This document shows positions 8,513 through 50,344 of a stretch of DNA of 64,000 nucleotides, piece after piece. Below the pieces are notes generated by a model, which saw nothing but the letters and a program-made list of their open reading frames with translations, was not told where the DNA came from and searched no databases. Where the stretch lies: the IMG/VR virus record IMGVR_UViG_3300045971_000577, positions 1-64,000 of that record; one strand, written 5' to 3'. Positions within the stretch are counted from its first letter, which is position 1, and each line of letters begins with the position of its first letter. The position numbers were made by a program, and so were the translations under genes.

Positions 8513-9690
8513 CTATTGAAGTAGCGTAGCGTCATCCGGGAACCAGTCACATCACGACCTTGCAGGGTACGCTCCAGACGCCTGGAGCGTAGTGTGATGC
8601 GGGTCTTACTCAGCCCCCACGCATTCGGGAAAGGTTGACTTCTCATGTGTGTATTATGTAGCGACAGCGTGAAGCAGTCAACCTAGATCTGAAGGGACGA
8701 TGGTGATCTGGCCGCCCTGTTGGATGTGGGCGAACAGATCCTTGAAACCCGCAAGCAATGAGCTCTCCATGTGGAAGCCGTGATCAGCCTCGCACCTGGC
8801 CTGCGAGATGATTGCTTGCTGGAGTGCGAACAGAAGGTTAGATTGTTGGACGTTCATGTCACTCCTTCCAACTGACAGGCATCGTGAATGCCTGTGCGTT
8901 GTTCAACCGCTTCACCTCATCACAATCGTAGCCTTCGCTAACTAGGACGAACCTTGCGGCGCTGAGACTCGCATGATTTCCTTCCAGGATGGTGCAGTGT
9001 CGGCCGCCGGTGGCCTCGCGTTCAATCTGGCGTTCAAACCACGGCTTGTCAGCCAGTGCGCGAGCTTGTGCAGGAGTGATCACTTGATGTCCTTCAGCTT
9101 GATGCAGAGTGACTTGTCACCCTTGGCAGCGTACCAGGAATGGGCGCCAGGGCAGAAGTACATGGAGATGATGCGATCGCCGAAGAGTTCACGCAACGAC
9201 TTCTCCAGTTTCCACTGTTTGGCTTGCTTGGCCTTGAAAACATCGGTGGCAAACCACAACTTCAGCCGTCGGGTGGGGGCCTTGGGCTTCGCCTTGCTGT
9301 CATCGTTGAAAATGCTGCGTTGCGACGCGCTGTCGAAACCAGCTTCCACCAGTGCCAGTCGGAACAGGCCGATATCTCCACGGAAGGTGCGTGCCATAAT
9401 GCTGTGATTCCTTGTTGCGATGTATGTATTATGCGCGACTGAACGGAATAGGTCAAGCAGTTTGCGAAACTTCCTTGAGGAAGTAGGCAATCTTGCCGCT
9501 ACCGCTACCCTTGAAGAAGCGGTTGTCGGGTTGCAGCTTCACGTCAAATGGGCTGGAACCTTTTTCGTTGTCCCATTGCATAATTCCGGTGACACGGCCG
9601 TCCTTGACTTCGATGTTCGAGAAGGACGTTTCGCGACGTGGCTTGGATCCGTAGATCTGGCGCATGGCAATGTATTTCATGGGAGTCCTT

Positions 9691-20676: not shown

Positions 20677-20901
20677 TTATTGGTGCTCGAGCAGCGTTTG
20701 ACAGTGCAGGCAGCGTATGCATGCAGGGACCGCTAAACGCCGCGCATCCGCTATTTTTTCGCCACAATCCACGCAAATATCCGACCCTTTGCCCTGCAGC
20801 ATACGCCCGCGCACAGCAGCAATCGCGTTCTCATTCAAGTGCATCGCGTGGAGTTGACCCATCTCTTCTTCGGCAATGTTACTATGCTGGGTGTTATCCA
20901 T
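20677..20901 (-). CDS. TraR/DksA C4-type zinc-finger protein
   Basis: CVDCGEKIADARRLAVPACIRCLHCQ. Confidence 0.88.
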   Translation of the reverse strand: MDNTQHSNIAEEEMGQLHAMHLNENAIAAVRGRMLQGKGSDICVDCGEKIADARRLAVPACIRCLHCQTLLEHQ

Positions 20902-21571
20902 TTTCGAGTTCAGCTTTCTTTCGAGCCAGAAATGCATTCATAGAATTTCTTCTCTTCTGCCGTGTCTCTTCGGAGATAGGTTTTGGAGGATTATCCTTTA
21001 GGTAGGCCTTACGAGTCTCGGATTGTTTCCGTTTTGTTTCTTCCGAGTGGTGCTTTCCAAAATTCGGATGATTGACTCCTGCTATTTTAGCAGAAATAAG
21101 CTCCTTTGTCTCATCTGAATGAAAATTGCCTTTGTTCTTTGCACCAATCTTAGATCTTGTTTCTGCCGTCGGAACTCTGCCATAGTTTGGATTATTTTCA
21201 CCAGACGTTGCTGCAGATATTCTTCTTTTTGTTTCGTCTGTATGGCCGTCACACTTGAAGCGTCTCTTTGCGTTATACTTTACATTTTTGTTTATCAATA
21301 GAGGATTATTCCAGTTCTCGAAGATTAGCGATTGCTCAAAGTCATAAGCAGACTGATCATCAAAGAATTCGGCAACGATAGTCCAATTGAACTCGCTGAA
21401 TGTTTTCTTTATTGGTGGTGAAGATGTGAAGTAGATCTTTCCAAAATCTTCCGAAGATGGAAGATTATGAAAAACATTTCTTTCTCGATAGCCGATATAG
21501 ATCTTGCCGGTGACAGAGTGGACGCCTATATACACATAGGGCATCGGTTTAGTCGAGGCAGGGAACGTCAC
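20894..21571 (-). CDS. GIY-YIG endonuclease with NUMOD3-like repeats
   Basis: YVYIG..TGKIYIGYR; repeated HT/SxETK..IS and NPNYG; TAAATA upstream; AT-rich. Confidence 0.85.
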   Translation of the reverse strand: MTFPASTKPMPYVYIGVHSVTGKIYIGYRERNVFHNLPSSEDFGKIYFTSSPPIKKTFSEFNWTIVAEFFDDQSAYDFEQSLIFENWNNPLLINKNVKYNAKRRFKCDGHTDETKRRISAATSGENNPNYGRVPTAETRSKIGAKNKGNFHSDETKELISAKIAGVNHPNFGKHHSEETKRKQSETRKAYLKDNPPKPISEETRQKRRNSMNAFLARKKAELENG

Positions 21572-22193: not shown

Positions 22194-22679
22194 GTTAGGC
22201 CTCCTCAGCTTCGAGCTCTTCCAGAAGCTTCACACCAGCAGCGATTGCTTCTTCGTCGTTGGTTGCTTCCAGCAGTATCTCGTCCCCACACCAGCAGAAG
22301 AAGTATTGCTTCAGATCCCGCCAATACGACACCCGCTCGTTCAGTTCTCGGATGATGGGATCGGTTTTGGGTTTGGACATTTGGGTTGATTCCTGTTGCG
22401 ATGTCACTATTATGCAGCGACCTGTCTGGATTGTCAACTGCTAAATGAATTGCGGTCCACCCTGTTGTTTCGGGCTACTCATCCTTACGGGATGATAAGC
22501 ATCGCGAAATGCTTTCGGTTATTTCCGATACTGTAAGGCCCCTTCGCGGGAACCTTGTGGACTGCAATGCACTCACCCGAAAAGGACCTTTCGGTCCAGT
22601 CCAGGCACTGCTCTTCCTTTAGTAAATGGTGGCCCAAGCCCTTACGCTTGGGAACCGCACCCAACCCCAACCTTGTTGC

Positions 22680-23156: not shown

Positions 23157-23851
23157 ATCAAACTCTCTTTCTTGCATTGGGTTGGGGTTGCATGAGCTGC
23201 GTCTGCTGCCCATGTATGTATTGTGTGGCTGGGCATACTTTTGGGCAAGTCTTTTAGGCGGTGCAGATGTAACAATTTGCGGAAAAGAGAAAACCACCGA
23301 AGTGGTTTATTTACAGGTGAAACTTTTTATTTTTCGTATCAAATCATTTGTGGGCGGTGTAACTGTTCCACCGGTTGAAGTGATATAAAATGTAAGAGAT
23401 ACATGCAGATTTGAAACTTTTCTGCATAATGCCTTTAGTTCCGATTCGGTATATACTCCATATTGAAAGTTACATCTAAGAAGTATTCTATTATAAATGT
23501 TCCGGATTTCCGTTTCTATCTGTTGCTGCATGTTCCTGGTCCATTCGTTGATCTGCTGTATCCAGTATTTGATTCATTTCCTTCAATATATTCAACATAT
23601 GAATTTCGAGTTCTTCTTTAGTCATCTTACCTGGATGTTTTTCGAATTCTGTCAATCTCATTATTTTATTCCCTTCATTACAGGATTTTCAGCAAGCTGA
23701 TGCATATAGAAATCAATCTCTTCTACAGACATATTTTCTACAGATCTTTGTTCCAGTTCAAATAATCTCATCATGCTGTCCTCCGTTATACTATTTATCA
23801 AAAGAAAGCCTGCACAGGGCAGGCTAACTTGGTTAGGACTTGGTGAAAGTC

Positions 23852-24097: not shown

Positions 24098-24139
24098 AAT
24101 GTCTCCTTAGTTGATAATCTAAGTATAACAGTTCATGCC

Positions 24140-24530
24140 ACGAATGTCAAGAGAGTGGGCATCGGTTTTGACACGCGATGCCCACTATGATACGGTTGAA
24201 GCGTGGTCCGGAGGTAAGTCTCGGTACGCAAACCGCAGCCATCCATATACTGGAGCGGCACCTCGGGCACCTTGGCTGTTATCGGCAGTTTCTATGCTTG
24301 CCGCTTATCGATGGGACCCTTGTAACATTAGGTATCCCGAACCCAATGCACGACCGTCAGTTAGGAATAGACAGACACTAGCGGATAAATCTTCCTACAC
24401 CCTTTCGGGCTCCGCTGCTGGTTTGATAGCCACTGCAGACAAACCAAGTCTGAAGTGCGGTATGCGGTCCACTCGGCCATCGACGCTCCATCCAGGAAGT
24501 TATTAGCCCAACCATTGCTGGTCCCCTGCT
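24140..24530 (-). ncRNA. Candidate structured ncRNA
   Basis: No credible ORF; nested stems TGGAGCG/CGCTCCA, TCGATGG/CCATCGA, GACCG/CGGTC; GAAA tetraloop. Confidence 0.5.
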
Positions 24531-24573
24531 CAGCAGGAAAGGGCCCGAAAGCCCCTTGTGGATCCTATTTGGC

Positions 24574-26070
24574 TTACATGCCAGCCAGGATGCCAACCAG
24601 CGCCGCCGCTTTCGGCACGCCCAAACCAGTCGACAGGTCGTAACCCACCTTGGCTTGGGTGGCGCTCGGCCCACCGCTCACCACGTCGTTGAACGCTTGC
24701 GAGTACAGCAGCGGATTCGAAGCCACGGCGTAGAGCGCAGCCTGGAAGTCGATTGGCGTCTTGAACTGCTCAGCACGCACCGCGTTGGTGATTGCCGCCA
24801 ATGCCGCCCACTGCGGAGCACCGATGCTGGTACCGTAGCCACCGTACCAGCCGCAGTTCGCTGCACCCTTGGCTGTCACACATGCCTTGTCCGGGATCTG
24901 CGCACTGGGCGTCAGATACACGGAAAGCGCACTGGCCGCGTCAGCATCGAACGCCACGTCAGGCACTGCACGTCGCGGAAGGCCCAGGCTGGTTTGGTAA
25001 GTCGGCGTCGCATAGAACTGTGTCACGCCACCACCACTGCCACCCCAACCAGTGTCAACTGCACCCAGGTTGTTCGTGCCGCCGACAGCCAGCACACGGT
25101 TGGACACGGATGGCCAGATGGGACGTGCACCGATGTCGCCGCTGGCAGCCACGTAGGTGACGCCCGTTTTGCTGAACGCGATCGTGTCCCAGCCACCAGC
25201 CGTGTAGTTGATCTGTCCGTTGGGCATGATCGGATTGGCAGGACCGTACAGGTAAGTAGCGGTGGCCGAAGCTGCGGTGCAGGTGGGGTCGTACTGGACG
25301 AGCACACCTTGCTTGTTCTTCACACCCTGGCAGGTCGAAGCAAACCCGCTTTCGGCGCCGCCCCAACTCATCGAAACCACGTTGCCGATCTTGGCGCCGT
25401 ACTGCACACCAAAGGACAGCGCACTGACGAAGGGGCTCGGAACTTGCACCAGGACGATGGTCGCCATCGGCGCGATCGCATGCGCCCACTCGATGTCCAT
25501 GCTGGATTCGGCCATCCAGTTCATGTCGTCGCCGAAGGTCTGCTTGGTCGGGCGCCCGGTAGAGGTCAGGTTGATGACCTGGAAGGAGCAGCCGCTACCT
25601 GCAGTCGGCTTCGGCGAGTTGGCGTTGTAGTAGCCGGAAACAGGGTCCACGGTGTAGTTGGTGGTAACCACGTTGCACTGCGGAAGCCCGTGTTGCGCGG
25701 AGAACTTGGCCAGATCGCCCGCCGCGTTGGGGTTGTTGTAGGCGGAAACAATGACGATGACCTGTCCGCTGCCTTGCTGCGCGGGAGTCGTCAACGTGCC
25801 AAATCCGTAACGGGCACGAACTTGGGCGGGATTTTGGCCAAGGGTGGCAAGACCACCGGCCGTCTTCACGGATGCAAGCACGCCCGCAGTGGTAGTCGCC
25901 GCCATGGGTTGCATTTCCGGTTCGGCACCCAGCGCGGTTGCCGTTTCGCTGTCACTTTGTGTGGCCACAGCGTCTTTGGCCAACTGGTCGGGACCAGTGT
26001 TTTCACCACCGCCACATGCTGCCAACAGGCACGCCGTTGCGATGATGCTCAGGGATTGGAGCTTCTTCAT
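24574..26070 (-). CDS. S53 (sedolisin-like) serine peptidase, lipoprotein
   Basis: Lipobox LAAC; ESSMDIEWAHAIAP, AASGD, GTSIGAP; early promoter upstream. Confidence 0.85.
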   Translation of the reverse strand: MKKLQSLSIIATACLLAACGGGENTGPDQLAKDAVATQSDSETATALGAEPEMQPMAATTTAGVLASVKTAGGLATLGQNPAQVRARYGFGTLTTPAQQGSGQVIVIVSAYNNPNAAGDLAKFSAQHGLPQCNVVTTNYTVDPVSGYYNANSPKPTAGSGCSFQVINLTSTGRPTKQTFGDDMNWMAESSMDIEWAHAIAPMATIVLVQVPSPFVSALSFGVQYGAKIGNVVSMSWGGAESGFASTCQGVKNKQGVLVQYDPTCTAASATATYLYGPANPIMPNGQINYTAGGWDTIAFSKTGVTYVAASGDIGARPIWPSVSNRVLAVGGTNNLGAVDTGWGGSGGGVTQFYATPTYQTSLGLPRRAVPDVAFDADAASALSVYLTPSAQIPDKACVTAKGAANCGWYGGYGTSIGAPQWAALAAITNAVRAEQFKTPIDFQAALYAVASNPLLYSQAFNDVVSGGPSATQAKVGYDLSTGLGVPKAAALVGILAGM

Positions 26071-26189
26071 GATTTCCTTTCGGTTGATTTCAGGATGCAA
26101 CCACCCGGTTGCTTCACTGCAGGGCCTTTGCTGCCCATGTATGTATTATGTCACCTCTGCCAACTGTGGTCAACAACCTTTTGAAACAA

Positions 26190-26640
26190 AAGAAACGTGG
26201 CCCGGAGGCCACGTGAGGACGGTTGTAACCCTTTTCCATCTTCGGGAAGGTAAACCGTAAGTAGGGAGGCTGATCTTCTTGGCAGCCTACCCGCGAAAAA
26301 GGGAGTTTCTGGTGATTCCCTATGATACTTCTTTAACATTGTTGGGGATCATATTCACACCTGGAGCATCCCGAGCTCAGGTGAGGATCGTCAGATAGGA
26401 ATAGACGAACCTTAGGGGATTTTCATCCTACCTCTTTCGAGTCCCCTGCATCTTGTCAACTAGGCGCTCGATGCCGTAGTTGGCAGCACGAATGCTGTCA
26501 ACAGATAAAAGGAAGGCACCCAAGGGTGCCTTGAAGAGCTGAACCAAAGATTTTCGGAGGTGCATGGTTACTCTCTTATTCACCATACCTGTCCTCAAAC
26601 CATCCCACGGATAATAGGTGTAGGGTAGAAGCTCGGGCCG
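26190..26640 (-). ncRNA. Candidate structured ncRNA(s)
   Basis: Dense hairpins ending in terminator-like CACGTGGCC/GGCCACGT plus T-run; shares a motif with 24355-24415. Confidence 0.5.
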
Positions 26641-26945
26641 TCTAAAAGCCGCTTTGGTTGGAAGCGACACATCGGGTGCCTGCCACTTCCATTTGGGTGA
26701 TGTACTACTTGGGCACCAGGTTCAGAGTGGAGGGGGCTCGACGAAGTCTTCGATCAGCGAAATCTTGCAGGTTTCTGTGGGGCCGAACTCGAACCCGTGT
26801 TGCAAGGCAACCATCATGCCGTCCTTCAGATCCTTCTCCGTCGTGTCGTCCTCGACATCGAACAGGATTTGGAATGCTACTTTCTTCATGTGTTTGTTCT
26901 CCGTTTGTTGAAAGGGGCGGGCGGTTTATTTCCCGCCCCTGCTAC

Positions 26946-28100: not shown

Positions 28101-28446
28101 TCTCCTTGTTGCACTGCGCTCTGCAGTGTATGCATTATGCGATCAATCAGCGGATTGGTCAAGCACTTACTTCGTTCTGGTCCAATCCTTGAAATAGAAC
28201 CGGTGGGTGCCGACCAGGAAGGACTCGTGCCCTTCGTGCACCACATCGAACGGAATCGGAAGGCCGCCATCGTGGCTGATATGCCCGGTTACGCGAACTG
28301 CGGTGACCGTGTCAATGGATGCGGCAACCTTCGTGAGTTGACCCCAGAAGCCAAGGTAGGGAATGTAGTTGGGACTGGCCATTGTGTTCCACCAAAGTGT
28401 GTTGCGATGTCTGTATTATGCAGGCACTTGACCACTTGGTCAAGCA

Positions 28447-28905
28447 TTAAATGGTGGACCAATCGTCGAGCATGTCCATTCGACGATACGGATGGAACCT
28501 CGTCTTGCCGTCCCAGCGATCTTCGATGGTCGAAACACGCGGCATGCCCATACCGGACACCTGTTCGCCCAATGGCTTCCACGCATTTCCATGGTATTTC
28601 ACATGCCATTCGTTGTCGCGGAACAGGTAGTTGTATTCGTATTCGTCGTGATCGGAAAGCACCGGACTGATGTTAATCCGAACGGGATCGCTGCGCCCGC
28701 GGTAATAAGAAAGCGTTGTGGCGTAGCTGTCGCCCAGACTGGAAATGTCGCCCAACGAAACCAGCGCCGCCACCTGCTCCAGCGTGGTATAGCAACGATG
28801 CAACAGGACACCGTTGTATTGCAGGTAGCCATCCGAGTGGACATACACACTTGCAAAGACACCCGAAACAGGGTGCATGACGATAATGCTGCTATTGGTT
28901 GACAT
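28447..28905 (-). CDS. Hypothetical phage protein (YxHxDGY motif)
   Basis: SVYVHSDGYL..NGVLL. Confidence 0.7.
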   Translation of the reverse strand: MSTNSSIIVMHPVSGVFASVYVHSDGYLQYNGVLLHRCYTTLEQVAALVSLGDISSLGDSYATTLSYYRGRSDPVRINISPVLSDHDEYEYNYLFRDNEWHVKYHGNAWKPLGEQVSGMGMPRVSTIEDRWDGKTRFHPYRRMDMLDDWSTI

Positions 28906-29365: not shown

Positions 29366-29632
29366 TCATGCTCCGGGAGTTCGTCGAATGACGATGAAGT
29401 CGGTGTAGTCTCCCCCATCGTACAGGTCGTAATCCAGACAGCGGGTGTGAATCTTTTCGGCCGAGATGGTGATGTTGGCAGCACTGGCACCTTCCCACTT
29501 GTTGAGGATGTCAGCGAGGATATTCTCCAGCGTTTCATCACCGGCGATGTACATCACCGTGTCCGTGTCATCCGGCCAGAAGTCTCGGATTTGGTGGCCG
29601 AACTCGTTTCTCGGCCGATAAGTGATACCCAT
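29366..29632 (-). CDS. FWPDDTDT family protein
   Basis: Tandem paralog of 29634-29903. Confidence 0.8.
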   Translation of the reverse strand: MGITYRPRNEFGHQIRDFWPDDTDTVMYIAGDETLENILADILNKWEGASAANITISAEKIHTRCLDYDLYDGGDYTDFIVIRRTPGA

Positions 29633-29633
29633 G

Positions 29634-29903
29634 TCAGGCTCCTTGCAGGCGTGTGATTTTAATGAAGGTGGTGTAATCACCCGGATCGTACAGGTCGTAT
29701 CCGAGGCAATCGGTGTGGATGTGCTCGGATGTGATTTGGATTTGAGTCAGTGCAGCGTCTGCCCACTTCTCGTAGATCTTCTGGAGCAGATCGGCCATGA
29801 TGGGAGGAGAACCGTGCCAGAAGTCGGTCGGAATATACATCTCCGTGTCCGTGTCATCCGGCCAGAAAGTTCTGATCCCGCCGTCACGTGTACCGTATCC
29901 CAT
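29634..29903 (-). CDS. FWPDDTDT family protein
   Basis: RTFWPDDTDTEMYI..EHIHTDCLGYDLYD. Confidence 0.8.
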   Translation of the reverse strand: MGYGTRDGGIRTFWPDDTDTEMYIPTDFWHGSPPIMADLLQKIYEKWADAALTQIQITSEHIHTDCLGYDLYDPGDYTTFIKITRLQGA

Positions 29904-30324
29904 GTCTTTGCTCCTTGTTGCCACTATTATGTAGCAGCAGCAACTACCTGTCAATGACTATTTGAAACCTAGTCGGTAGTCTTTTCGACGGTGACTTCTT
30001 TCCAGGCACCCGGCGCGTAGATCCGACCTTCGGTCATGTTGCCGTTCATATCAATCTCAGCTTCGAGGATCAGCTCTCCACCTGGGCCGACATGAATGCC
30101 GTCGTCCAATACCTTGTAGACGGGATACAAGCCCACGTGGGCGCCACCCGGCTGGATGATTACTTTCAGCATGTCAGAGCTCCGCGTTGACGTCGACGAT
30201 TTCAGTTTCGACGATGTCGTTGCCGTGCGCGAAGTGGTAGTCCATCTCGGCCACCAGTGTGGACACGTCTGCATCCTCGCGAACGGTCAGCTTTACTGTC
30301 ACTTCGATTGTCTTGGTTCCCATG

Positions 30325-45843: not shown

Positions 45844-45928
45844 TGGTGCGAGCAGAGGGATTCGAACCCTCAATCCTTGCGGCGGGGGATTTTAAGTCCC
45901 CAATGTATCCCAGTTCCATCATGCTCGC
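45844..45928 (-). tRNA. tRNA-Leu(UAA)
   Basis: GCGAGCA/TGCTCGC acceptor, GGGGA-CTTAAAA-TCCCC, long variable arm, GGTTCGAATCC, CCA. Confidence 0.92.
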
Positions 45929-49498: not shown

Positions 49499-49574
49499 TG
49501 GTAGACCCTGAAGGAGTCGAACCTTCGCCTGACGGTTATGAGCCGACTGCTATTACCACATTAGCTTAGGGTCC
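49499..49574 (-). tRNA. tRNA with CAU anticodon (Ile2-like or Met)
   Basis: GGACCCT/AGGGTCT acceptor, CTCATAA loop, GAAGG-TTCGACT-CCTTC, ACCA. Confidence 0.88.
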
Positions 49575-50268: not shown

Positions 50269-50344
50269 TGGTCCGCCCGCCAAGACTCGAACTTGGAATA
50301 AGAGCTTAGAAGGCTCCTGTGATCATCCCTTTCACCACGGGCAG
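50269..50344 (-). tRNA. tRNA-Arg(UCU)
   Basis: CTGCCCG/CGGGCGG acceptor, GGAGC-CTTCTAA-GCTCT, TTCGAGT, ACCA. Confidence 0.9.

What the first reader, a model, noticed from the sequence alone, without database searches (positions are those of the whole stretch)
24355..26446. Same pseudoknot-like motif on both sides of the S53 peptidase gene
Seen on the minus strand: GCGGA-GCCCGAAAGGGT-GTAGGA-AGATTTA-TCCGC-TAG..GTCTATTCCTAACTGACG (24415-24355) and GGGGA-CTCGAAAGAG-GTAGGA-TGAAAA-TCCCC-TAAG..GTCTATTCCTATCTGACG (26446-26389). The outer stem covaries (GCGGA/TCCGC versus GGGGA/TCCCC), the GAAA hairpin covaries, and loop TAGGA can pair with the downstream TCCTA. The topology recalls small ribozymes such as pistol, but the pistol core words are absent. 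Inference: an undescribed ribozyme, aptamer or processing signal, or a relic of the event that captured the peptidase.
Basis: partly seen in the sequence, partly recalled or inferred. Interest (0 to 1): 0.65.

Follow-up and report, generated by a model that had tools for sequence, protein, structure and literature searches.

The report
Double-pseudoknot RNA module in phage spacers
The repeated motif is real: it belongs to a small, undescribed family of about 105-base RNA modules, each three hairpins locked by two pseudoknots, that sit in the untranslated spacers between early genes of some freshwater jumbo phages; its function is unknown and it is not tied to the peptidase gene.

Summary
The window is the first 64 kb of a 369-kb jumbo-phage record.

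- **Structure.** On the minus strand each copy folds as H1 (a 6-bp stem enclosing a small tetraloop hairpin), H2 and H3. PK1 pairs the H1 inner loop with the H2 loop. PK2 pairs the H3 loop with a strand 7-10 nt downstream.
- **Copies.** The window holds three: A (26447-26345), B (24416-24313), and a divergent B0 (24528-24419) directly upstream of B. Three more (C, D, E) lie in related phage contigs.
- **Covariation.** All helices and both pseudoknots show compensatory changes. There are 11 G·U cells and no A·C cells, so the folded strand is the gene-strand RNA.
- **Known families.** No Rfam family matches, pistol included.
- **Peptidase link.** A complete relative carries the peptidase at the same place with no module. 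C, D and E have modules with no peptidase. Capture is therefore not the explanation. These spacers are built from interchangeable cassettes, much like PeSL regions of T4-type phages.
- **Function.** Not shown. My best guess (about 25-30%) is a cis-acting 3'-UTR domain that acts as a decay or processing barrier. Ribozyme, aptamer, antitermination and decoy roles remain open.

The parts
26345..26447 (-). Module copy A. H1 outer stem 26447-26442 / 26419-26414. Inner hairpin 26441-26432 (GAAA loop). PK1a UAGGA 26430-26426. H2 26411-26404 / 26392-26385. PK1b UCCUA 26400-26396. H3 26383-26375 / 26367-26358. PK2a GGGAU 26372-26368. PK2b AUCCC 26349-26345.
   Evidence: Also found full length by a model built only from the relatives' copies (25.8 bits, E 1.9e-7, filters off, whole window).
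24313..24416 (-). Module copy B. H1 outer stem 24416-24411 / 24385-24380. Inner hairpin 24410-24399 (GAAA loop). PK1a 24397-24393. H2 24377-24370 / 24358-24351. PK1b 24366-24362. H3 24349-24341 / 24333-24325. PK2a 24338-24334. PK2b GUCCC 24317-24313.
24419..24528 (-). Module copy B0, divergent and closer to the relatives' type, in tandem directly upstream of B. H1 CAGGGG/UUCCUG. Inner hairpin CCA-GCAA-UGG. PK1 UUGG:CCGA. H2 with two bulged A. H3 with one mismatch. PK2 UGGUUU:AAACCA.
   Evidence: R3 gives 8.3 bits, E 0.02. Local alignment to C/D/E scores 42-48 against shuffles of 19-20 +/- 4, 0 of 500 reaching it. Pairs verified.
26190..26322 (-). 3' module after copy A. It has hairpin H4 (AGGGA, 12-nt loop ending AGAAAC, UCCCU), a variable hairpin H5, hairpin H6 (ACGGUUU...ACAACCGU) and the intrinsic terminator at 26214-26195. 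It is a separate, more widespread conserved RNA unit.
24152..24304 (-). 3' module after copy B: H4 (GCGGCA, loop, UGCCG), H5, H6 (GCGGUUUG...UCAACCG) and a terminator-like hairpin at 24186-24154.
24574..26070 (-). Peptidase-like gene (498 aa, lipoprotein-type signal peptide, 61-64% G+C against a 45% genome). It lies between the two spacers and is not part of the RNA family.
26145..26173 (-). Sigma-70-type promoter of the peptidase gene (TTGACC, 17 nt, CATAAT).
26473..26501 (-). Weak or decayed promoter upstream of copy A (TTGACA, 17 nt, TACGGC). It is positionally homologous to good promoters in relatives and is preceded by the terminator at 26532-26513.
24122..24150 (-). Promoter of the downstream winged-helix gene (TTGACA, 17 nt, TATACT). 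The gene is at 24097-23852.

Best explanation
What it is (about 0.85-0.9). It is a member of a small, undescribed family of roughly 105-110-nt RNA modules. Each has three hairpins in a row. H1 is a 6-bp stem that encloses a 2-4-bp hairpin with a 4-nt loop (GNRA in four of the six copies). H2 has a 7-8-bp stem and an 11-17-nt loop. H3 has an 8-9-bp stem and a 7-9-nt loop. Two H-type pseudoknots lock them. PK1 pairs the 5 nt that follow the inner hairpin with the H2 loop. PK2 pairs the H3 loop with a strand 7-10 nt downstream.

The modules are read on the gene strand. They lie in untranslated spacers between early genes, after an upstream ORF or terminator and 35-140 nt before an intrinsic terminator and the next gene's promoter.

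The motif is seen on both sides of the peptidase because spacers in this hyperplastic region are assembled from interchangeable cassettes. The cassette types are this module, a commoner 3' module, terminators and promoters. The two spacers around the peptidase happen to share the same composition.

How it works (inferred, about 0.25-0.3). It folds within the transcript as a compact, mechanically stable double pseudoknot and acts in cis as a barrier or boundary for RNA decay and processing. It would either protect the upstream message or define the 5' edge of a stable RNA derived from the 3' UTR that ends at the downstream terminator.

Shown here: presence, fold, strand, modularity and independence from the peptidase. 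Inferred: transcription, folding in vivo and the barrier function.
For: Fold. 29 of 29 pairs are kept between A and B, 12 with changes on both sides. For A with C, D and E, 23 pairs are 96.7% paired and 13 have double changes, against 0-4 in slid controls. My hand alignment of five copies has 35 pair positions, 168 of 169 cells paired, and 21 positions with double changes.

Pseudoknots covary. PK1 is UAGGA:UCCUA in A and B, UUGGG:CCCAA in C, D and E, and UUGG:CCGA in B0. PK2 is GGGAU:AUCCC, GGGAU:GUCCC, GGGAGU:ACUCCC, UGGGA:UCCCA and UGGUUU:AAACCA. The loop lengths fit H-type geometry: 1-3 nt cross PK2 and 7-10 nt cross H3.

Strand. There are 11 G·U cells and no A·C cells.

One family. The A/B model finds C. 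The model built from C, D and E alone finds A full length as the only extra hit in 64 kb.

Position. D and E start 5 nt after the stop codons of unrelated ORFs. Every copy is followed by a terminator.

Cassette behaviour. D and E share an identical H1-H2 but carry different H3 types. L258, whose winged-helix protein is 98% identical to that of L184, has a different spacer between the same conserved flanks.

Shape rather than sequence. No unpaired nucleotide is invariant across the six copies.
Against: There is no expression or end-mapping data; only two pond DNA runs hold the sequence. Only six copies are known, from four contigs of one phage clade, and some share ancestry. The cross-type alignment was made by hand and is fitted to the structure. 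Single-sequence folding energies are not exceptional (z from -2.2 to +0.45, pseudoknots not counted). A downstream terminator hairpin already protects 3' ends, so an added barrier is not obviously needed. The distance to the terminator varies. Copy A follows a terminator and a weak promoter, so it may be poorly transcribed.
Confidence: 0.3

Rival explanations
1. A trans-acting non-coding RNA domain, such as a protein-binding decoy, sponge or anti-defence RNA, released from the 3' UTR. The compact fold and the GGA-containing strands would be recognised by a host or phage protein.
For: Copies occur in tandem (B0-B) and next to another conserved RNA unit that can itself be tandem (L248). The distribution is patchy and accessory among close relatives. 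GGGA or AGGA is kept in both pseudoknot strands of most copies.
Against: The GGA strands are predicted to be paired, and their partners covary. No protein gene co-occurs specifically with the module; the winged-helix gene is present in hundreds of loci that lack it. There is no expression data.
Confidence: 0.15
2. A cis-acting processive antitermination element, working like HK022 put or the Bacillus EAR RNA. The nascent module would bind the transcribing polymerase and let it read through the terminators that separate these early genes.
For: Every copy lies upstream of an intrinsic terminator, in a region where each gene has its own terminator and promoter. There are several copies per phage. 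Structure is conserved with little sequence conservation.
Against: The argument is positional only. put RNAs are two plain stem-loops placed right after promoters (my own knowledge, not tested here). Modules C, D and E follow ORFs rather than promoters. Most relatives have the same terminators and no module.
Confidence: 0.12
3. A new class of self-cleaving ribozyme that cuts early transcripts between genes.
For: Pseudoknotted compact folds of about 100 nt in phage intergenic regions are typical of small ribozymes.
Against: No ribozyme family matches, even at E up to 10. No unpaired nucleotide is invariant across the six copies, and the junctions and loops differ between the A/B type and the C/D/E type. 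The hammerhead-like word CUGACGA in A is CUGACGG in B and is absent from C, D and E.
Confidence: 0.1
4. A ligand-binding aptamer (riboswitch) that controls the terminator downstream.
For: The fold is complex and pseudoknotted, it lies upstream of an intrinsic terminator, and the same element is found before two different genes.
Against: The distance to the terminator ranges from 35 to about 140 nt, with other modules in between. I saw no alternative pairing between module D and its terminator (by eye). There are no invariant pocket nucleotides. The next gene has its own promoter after the terminator.
Confidence: 0.08
5. Only a DNA-level relic: a duplicated spacer or recombination substrate left by insertion of the peptidase cassette, with no RNA function.
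For: Direct repeats flank a high-G+C, moron-like gene in a region of repeated promoter-terminator cassettes. In T4-type phages such cassettes (PeSLs) mediate shuffling (PMC2839356, PMC4122927).
Against: The repeats are only about 74% identical, and the differences are concentrated in compensatory pairs. Modules exist without the peptidase, and the peptidase exists without modules. The strand asymmetry, G·U but no A·C, points to selection on RNA.
Confidence: 0.05

Closest known systems
PeSL cassettes (promoter-early stem-loops) of T4-type phages (Arbiol et al. 2010, PMC2839356; Comeau et al. 2014, PMC4122927)
   Same: Short repeated non-coding cassettes flank non-essential genes in hyperplastic early regions. 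They sit at terminator-promoter boundaries and go with modular gene shuffling. The window shows repeated promoter and terminator families and cassette swaps between conserved flanks.
   Different: A PeSL is a promoter plus a simple terminator stem-loop, and its effect on genome shuffling is exerted through DNA recombination. This module carries no promoter, is about 105 nt with two pseudoknots, and evolves under RNA-structure constraint.
Pistol self-cleaving ribozyme (Rfam Pistol family)
   Same: A small RNA in which a loop strand pairs with a distant segment to form a pseudoknot. It is often found in phage-like DNA.
   Different: No covariance-model match even at E 10. The connectivity differs: here there are three hairpins and two separate H-type pseudoknots. 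No conserved core nucleotides are present.
Classical H-type pseudoknots with a long first stem, such as coronavirus-type frameshift stimulators and the pseudoknots of tmRNA (my own knowledge)
   Same: H3 with PK2 has an 8-9-bp stem 1, a 1-3-nt loop 1, a 5-6-bp stem 2 and a 7-10-nt loop 3, which is the geometry of mechanically robust H-type knots. Several knots come in series, as in tmRNA.
   Different: There is no slippery site or reading frame upstream. It is not part of a tRNA-like molecule, and ARAGORN finds no tmRNA.
HK022 put RNAs and the EAR antitermination RNA (my own knowledge)
   Same: They are cis-encoded structured RNAs in phage or operon transcripts that lie upstream of terminators. 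There are several diverged copies per genome, with structure better conserved than sequence.
   Different: put consists of two plain stem-loops directly after promoters.
Exoribonuclease-resistant RNAs and REP-type 3'-UTR stabilisers (my own knowledge; xrRNA review context in PMC11702639)
   Same: They are pseudoknotted or stable folds in untranslated regions that stop RNA-degrading enzymes, and they depend on shape more than on sequence.
   Different: xrRNAs block eukaryotic 5'-3' Xrn1 through a ring fold. REPs are simple palindromes. No resistance has been shown for this module.

Membership tests
Pistol ribozyme | A match to the family covariance model (P1 hairpin loop forming a 6-bp pseudoknot with the P2/P3 internal loop, plus conserved core nucleotides). 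| tested here: not met
   The Rfam 15 scan of 24200-26700 at E up to 10 lists no pistol hit. There is none in the whole window at gathering score and none in the C/D/E loci at E up to 1.
Hammerhead ribozyme | The conserved core CUGANGA ... GAAA around a three-way junction. | tested here: not met
   CUGACGA occurs in copy A only. B has CUGACGG, and C, D and E have CACUACC-type strands at that place. There is no Rfam hit.
Other small ribozymes in Rfam (twister, twister-sister, hatchet, HDV-like) | A match to any of the family models. | tested here: not met
   No hit at E up to 10 over the region or at E up to 1 over the relatives. The order of the paired strands also differs from the nested HDV fold, read directly from the sequence.
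tmRNA or tRNA | A tRNA-like acceptor and T arm, with detection by ARAGORN or the Rfam tRNA/tmRNA models. | tested here: not met
   ARAGORN and Rfam find only three ordinary tRNAs, at 45.8-50.3 kb. Nothing is found at the module in relatives.
H-type pseudoknot (structural class) | A hairpin loop pairs with a strand outside the hairpin, the loop lengths can span the stems, and the pairing is supported by covariation. | tested here: met
   PK1 and PK2 can be drawn in all six copies, with compensatory changes. Loop 1 is 1-3 nt and loop 3 is 7-10 nt for H3/PK2.
PeSL regulatory cassette | A composite of a strong early sigma-70 promoter and a terminator stem-loop, repeated through a hyperplastic region. 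| tested here: not met
   The region does have such promoter and terminator repeats. The module itself contains neither: it lies upstream of the terminator-promoter unit.
Riboswitch | A conserved ligand pocket together with an expression platform that competes with the aptamer. | tested here: inconclusive
   There are no invariant unpaired nucleotides, the distance to the terminator varies, and I saw no alternative pairing by eye. Ligand binding cannot be tested with these tools.

The most novel reading that the evidence does not exclude
The module is a new functional RNA class with an active role. It could be a new self-cleaving ribozyme, a polymerase- or nuclease-directed regulatory knot, or a phage RNA that disarms a host defence or RNA-decay protein. 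In that case it would be one of several unrecognised RNA cassettes (this module, the 3' module, the 'Y' element, the tRNA-like long RNA) that together make up an RNA-based regulatory layer in the early region of freshwater jumbo phages.
Probability: 0.2. Interest if true: 0.8.

Novelty: new variant of a known kind. Interest (0 to 1): 0.5.

Why it matters
Jumbo-phage early regions are usually annotated as strings of small unknown genes. Here the spacers between them turn out to hold conserved, covarying RNA folds. A double-pseudoknot module that is shuffled as a cassette gives a concrete candidate for testing how huge phages control transcript stability, processing or termination. It also adds a new family to RNA motif catalogues. 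Finally, it corrects a tempting misreading: direct repeats around a moron-like gene are not necessarily scars of its capture.

Tried and rejected
**Exact-pattern scans of IMG/VR.**
- The 14-base core gave only chance hits.
- Stricter composite patterns of the A/B type gave nothing or chance hits.
- The C-type pattern and the 3'-module pattern returned only contigs already known.

**Other collections.**
- A genome-contig scan with the winged-helix protein found no bacterial relatives, so there is no host clue.
- Whole metagenome records cannot be searched with a model.
- Eight look-ups of contigs encoding close winged-helix homologs gave 21 new loci. None showed a further 5' module: the R3 model was run on the first 11, a relaxed pattern screen on all 21, and I read some spacers by eye.

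**Alignment and model limits.**
- MAFFT cannot align the A/B type to the C/D/E type correctly.
- With default filters the C/D/E model misses A and B. Only filters-off recovers A. B is recovered only through its H3.

**Ideas dropped.**
- A closing helix P0 (A: 26459-26454 / 26338-26333; B: 24430-24425 / 24309-24303) covaries between A and B. It is not convincing in C, D or E, and in B it overlaps B0, so I do not count it.
- Opposite-strand ORFs cover some copies (window 24135-24506 +; L181 1573-1959 -; L184 2-325 -). I rejected them as genes: they run through terminators, promoters and neighbouring genes, have no family hit, and the G·U/A·C asymmetry favours the gene strand.
- The integron attC idea fails because the R'/R'' consensus words are not met by eye.
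- A CsrA-type sponge is unlikely, because the GGA strands are paired and do not fit the A(N)GGA loop context.

**Reads.** No RNA run holds the sequence. Laying the two DNA runs showed contigs only and nothing decisive.
Full report
**Setting.** The window is the first 64 kb of a 369,145-bp IMG/VR virus record with direct terminal repeats, rated complete. The genome is 44.9% G+C. Around the finding all credible genes lie on the minus strand. Each has its own sigma-70-type promoter and intrinsic terminator, and families of repeated promoter and terminator sequence recur. The gene between the two motif copies (26070-24574) encodes a 498-aa protein with a lipoprotein-type signal peptide. It is 61-64% G+C. 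It has no Pfam, NCBIfam or PDB sequence hit, but language-model features place it next to S8/S53 peptidase clusters at 0.97.

**The observation.** The 18-nt core occurs twice, against 0.10 expected, and a motif pattern finds only these two places in the genome. Rfam gives nothing there at gathering score or at E up to 10.

**Anatomy.** Reading the two copies side by side showed that the similarity runs about 150 nt and that the differences sit in helices. I built a covariance model from copy A plus a hand-drawn structure. It finds copy B at 65.8 bits. On the resulting structural alignment all 29 pairs are standard in both copies and 12 changed on both sides; slid controls give 0-2. The core module has these parts:
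- H1: a 6-bp outer stem enclosing a small hairpin with a GAAA loop.
- PK1a: 5 nt straight after the inner hairpin.
- H2: a stem whose loop carries the complement, PK1b.
- H3: an 8-9-bp stem with loop UCGGGAU.
- PK2: the GGGAU of the H3 loop pairs with AUCCC (A) or GUCCC (B) 7-8 nt downstream.

After a short linker comes a further hairpin, H4, with a loop ending AGAAAC. It proved to be the start of a separate unit.

**Relatives.** The flanking ATPase-like gene and the downstream winged-helix gene (PF14090) led to related phage contigs.

L121 is a complete 364-kb relative. It has the peptidase ortholog (42% identity over full length) between the same two genes. There the order is simply terminator, promoter, peptidase, terminator, promoter, with no module, and neither model finds a module anywhere in that genome.

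The A/B model found a third copy, C, in contig 3300009694_000671 at L119 10144-10250. A metagenome scan with an alignment of the winged-helix proteins gave 80 loci. Reading their upstream spacers revealed two more copies, D (L181 1618-1724) and E (L184 205-312). A descriptor script run over all relatives' loci found four of the five known copies (A escaped its strict H3 rule) and only two low-complexity hits besides, which I take as false.

D and E begin 5 nt after the stop codons of unrelated ORFs. They share an identical H1-H2. D has an A/B-like H3 (9 bp, loop UUGGGAU), whereas E has a C-like H3, so the family is mosaic.

**One family.** All copies are 103-110 nt from H1 to PK2b and have the same element lengths. 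A model built from C, D and E alone, run without filters over the whole window, finds copy A full length at 25.8 bits, E 1.9e-7, as the only extra hit. On that alignment 23 pairs are 96.7% paired and 13 have double changes; slid controls give 0-4.

My hand alignment of five copies has 35 pair positions, 168 of 169 cells paired, and 21 positions with double changes. PK1 changes from UAGGA:UCCUA to UUGGG:CCCAA, which is two compensated pairs. G·U occurs 11 times and A·C never, so the selected strand is the RNA of the gene strand.

**A third copy in the window.** The same filter-off search flagged 24533-24418, just upstream of B (8.3 bits). Its local alignment to C, D and E scores 42-48, against 19-20 +/- 4 for shuffles, with 0 of 500 shuffles reaching it. 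Every element can be drawn, and PK2 is fully compensated as UGGUUU:AAACCA. This copy, B0, runs from 24528 to 24419. The order downstream of the peptidase is therefore B0, B, 3' module, terminator, promoter, winged-helix gene.

**Context and modularity.** The 3' unit is H4, a variable H5, H6 (closing pairs such as CGGUU/AACCG) and then a terminator. It follows A, B and C. It also occurs alone in many relatives and in tandem in L248. I found 17 distinct examples, with covariation in H4 and H6. D and E lack it.

L258 encodes a winged-helix protein 98% identical to that of L184 and has the same upstream ORF end. Between those conserved flanks it carries a different spacer. So the spacers are assembled from interchangeable cassettes. 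This parallels the PeSL-mediated shuffling described for T4-type phages (PMC2839356, PMC4122927), although this module is itself neither a promoter nor a terminator.

**What it does.** Nothing here shows function. No RNA data exist: two pond DNA runs hold the stretch, and laying them added nothing. Single-sequence folds recover H1-H3 in B, D and E, but the energies are unexceptional.

Several features favour a role that depends on shape. No unpaired nucleotide is invariant across the six copies. The geometry of H3/PK2 is that of a robust H-type knot. The position is always inside an untranslated stretch before a terminator. I therefore commit, at about 25-30%, to a cis-acting barrier or boundary for RNA decay and processing.

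The rivals are a trans-acting decoy, antitermination, a ribozyme and an aptamer. I estimate each at 8-15%. A pure recombination relic is largely excluded.

**Limits.**
- There are six copies from four contigs of one clade.
- Part of the covariation evidence rests on alignments fitted to the structure.
- No tree-aware significance test was run.
- The pseudoknots could not be scored in one column frame by the counting tool, because the loop lengths differ.

Noticed in passing
window 26322-26190 and 24304-24152 (minus); L119 10311-10450; L178, L182, L186, L190, L192, L207, L217, L248 (two in tandem), L254, L258: A second, commoner conserved RNA unit of about 115-135 nt. It has hairpin H4 (GGGA, loop AUCAUUAGAAAC, UCCC), a variable hairpin, a covarying hairpin H6 and then a terminator. 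It lies just upstream of the winged-helix gene's promoter. There are 17 distinct examples, and 11 of 20 predicted pairs show compensatory change. No Rfam match.
   Followed up: partly
window about 26650-26513 (minus); L119 9255-9400; L157 6950-7085; also L172, L179, L180, L259: A further conserved non-coding element (GGCUUUUAGACGGCCCGAGCUUCUACCC ... UGGUUCAGC, then a terminator) downstream of the ATPase-like gene. It is shared by several relatives and absent from L121.
   Followed up: no
L119 about 9440-9670; similar in L179, L189, L190, L217: A promoter-driven RNA of about 230-300 nt with a tRNA-like T arm and acceptor end (GGGGUUCGAAUCCC ... CACC) and a 5' end that pairs with it, so it looks like a tmRNA or an intron-bearing tRNA. 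ARAGORN and Rfam do not call it.
   Followed up: no
L186 534-631: A 98-nt tRNA-like gene with a long insertion, matched by the Rfam tRNA model at 34.7 bits.
   Followed up: no
window 20894-21571 (minus); L260-L262 next to the winged-helix gene: An ORF with NUMOD3 motifs (homing-endonuclease type) in a low-G+C patch (about 41-44%). Similar ORFs abut the winged-helix gene in some relatives.
   Followed up: no
window 22392-22447, 23199-23226, 26124-26151, 28117-28140, 28398-28453, 29919-29935: Repeated promoter-proximal sequences (families D2, D3, D9 and D12), with sigma-70-like promoters on the minus strand at 22437, 24150, 26173, 28162 and 28443. The layout resembles the PeSL regions of T4-type phages.
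   Followed up: partly
window 29394-29876: Two pairs of direct repeats 268-286 nt apart (73-86% identical), suggesting tandem paralogous small genes.
   Followed up: no
window 45844-45928, 49499-49574, 50269-50344 (minus): Three phage tRNA genes: Leu-UAA, Met-CAU and Arg-UCU.
   Followed up: no
window 24574-26070 (minus) and L121 9238-10608: The peptidase-like lipoprotein gene is far richer in G+C than the genome (61-64% against 45%). It is only 42% identical to the ortholog in the relative, whereas its neighbours are 63-72% identical.
   Followed up: partly
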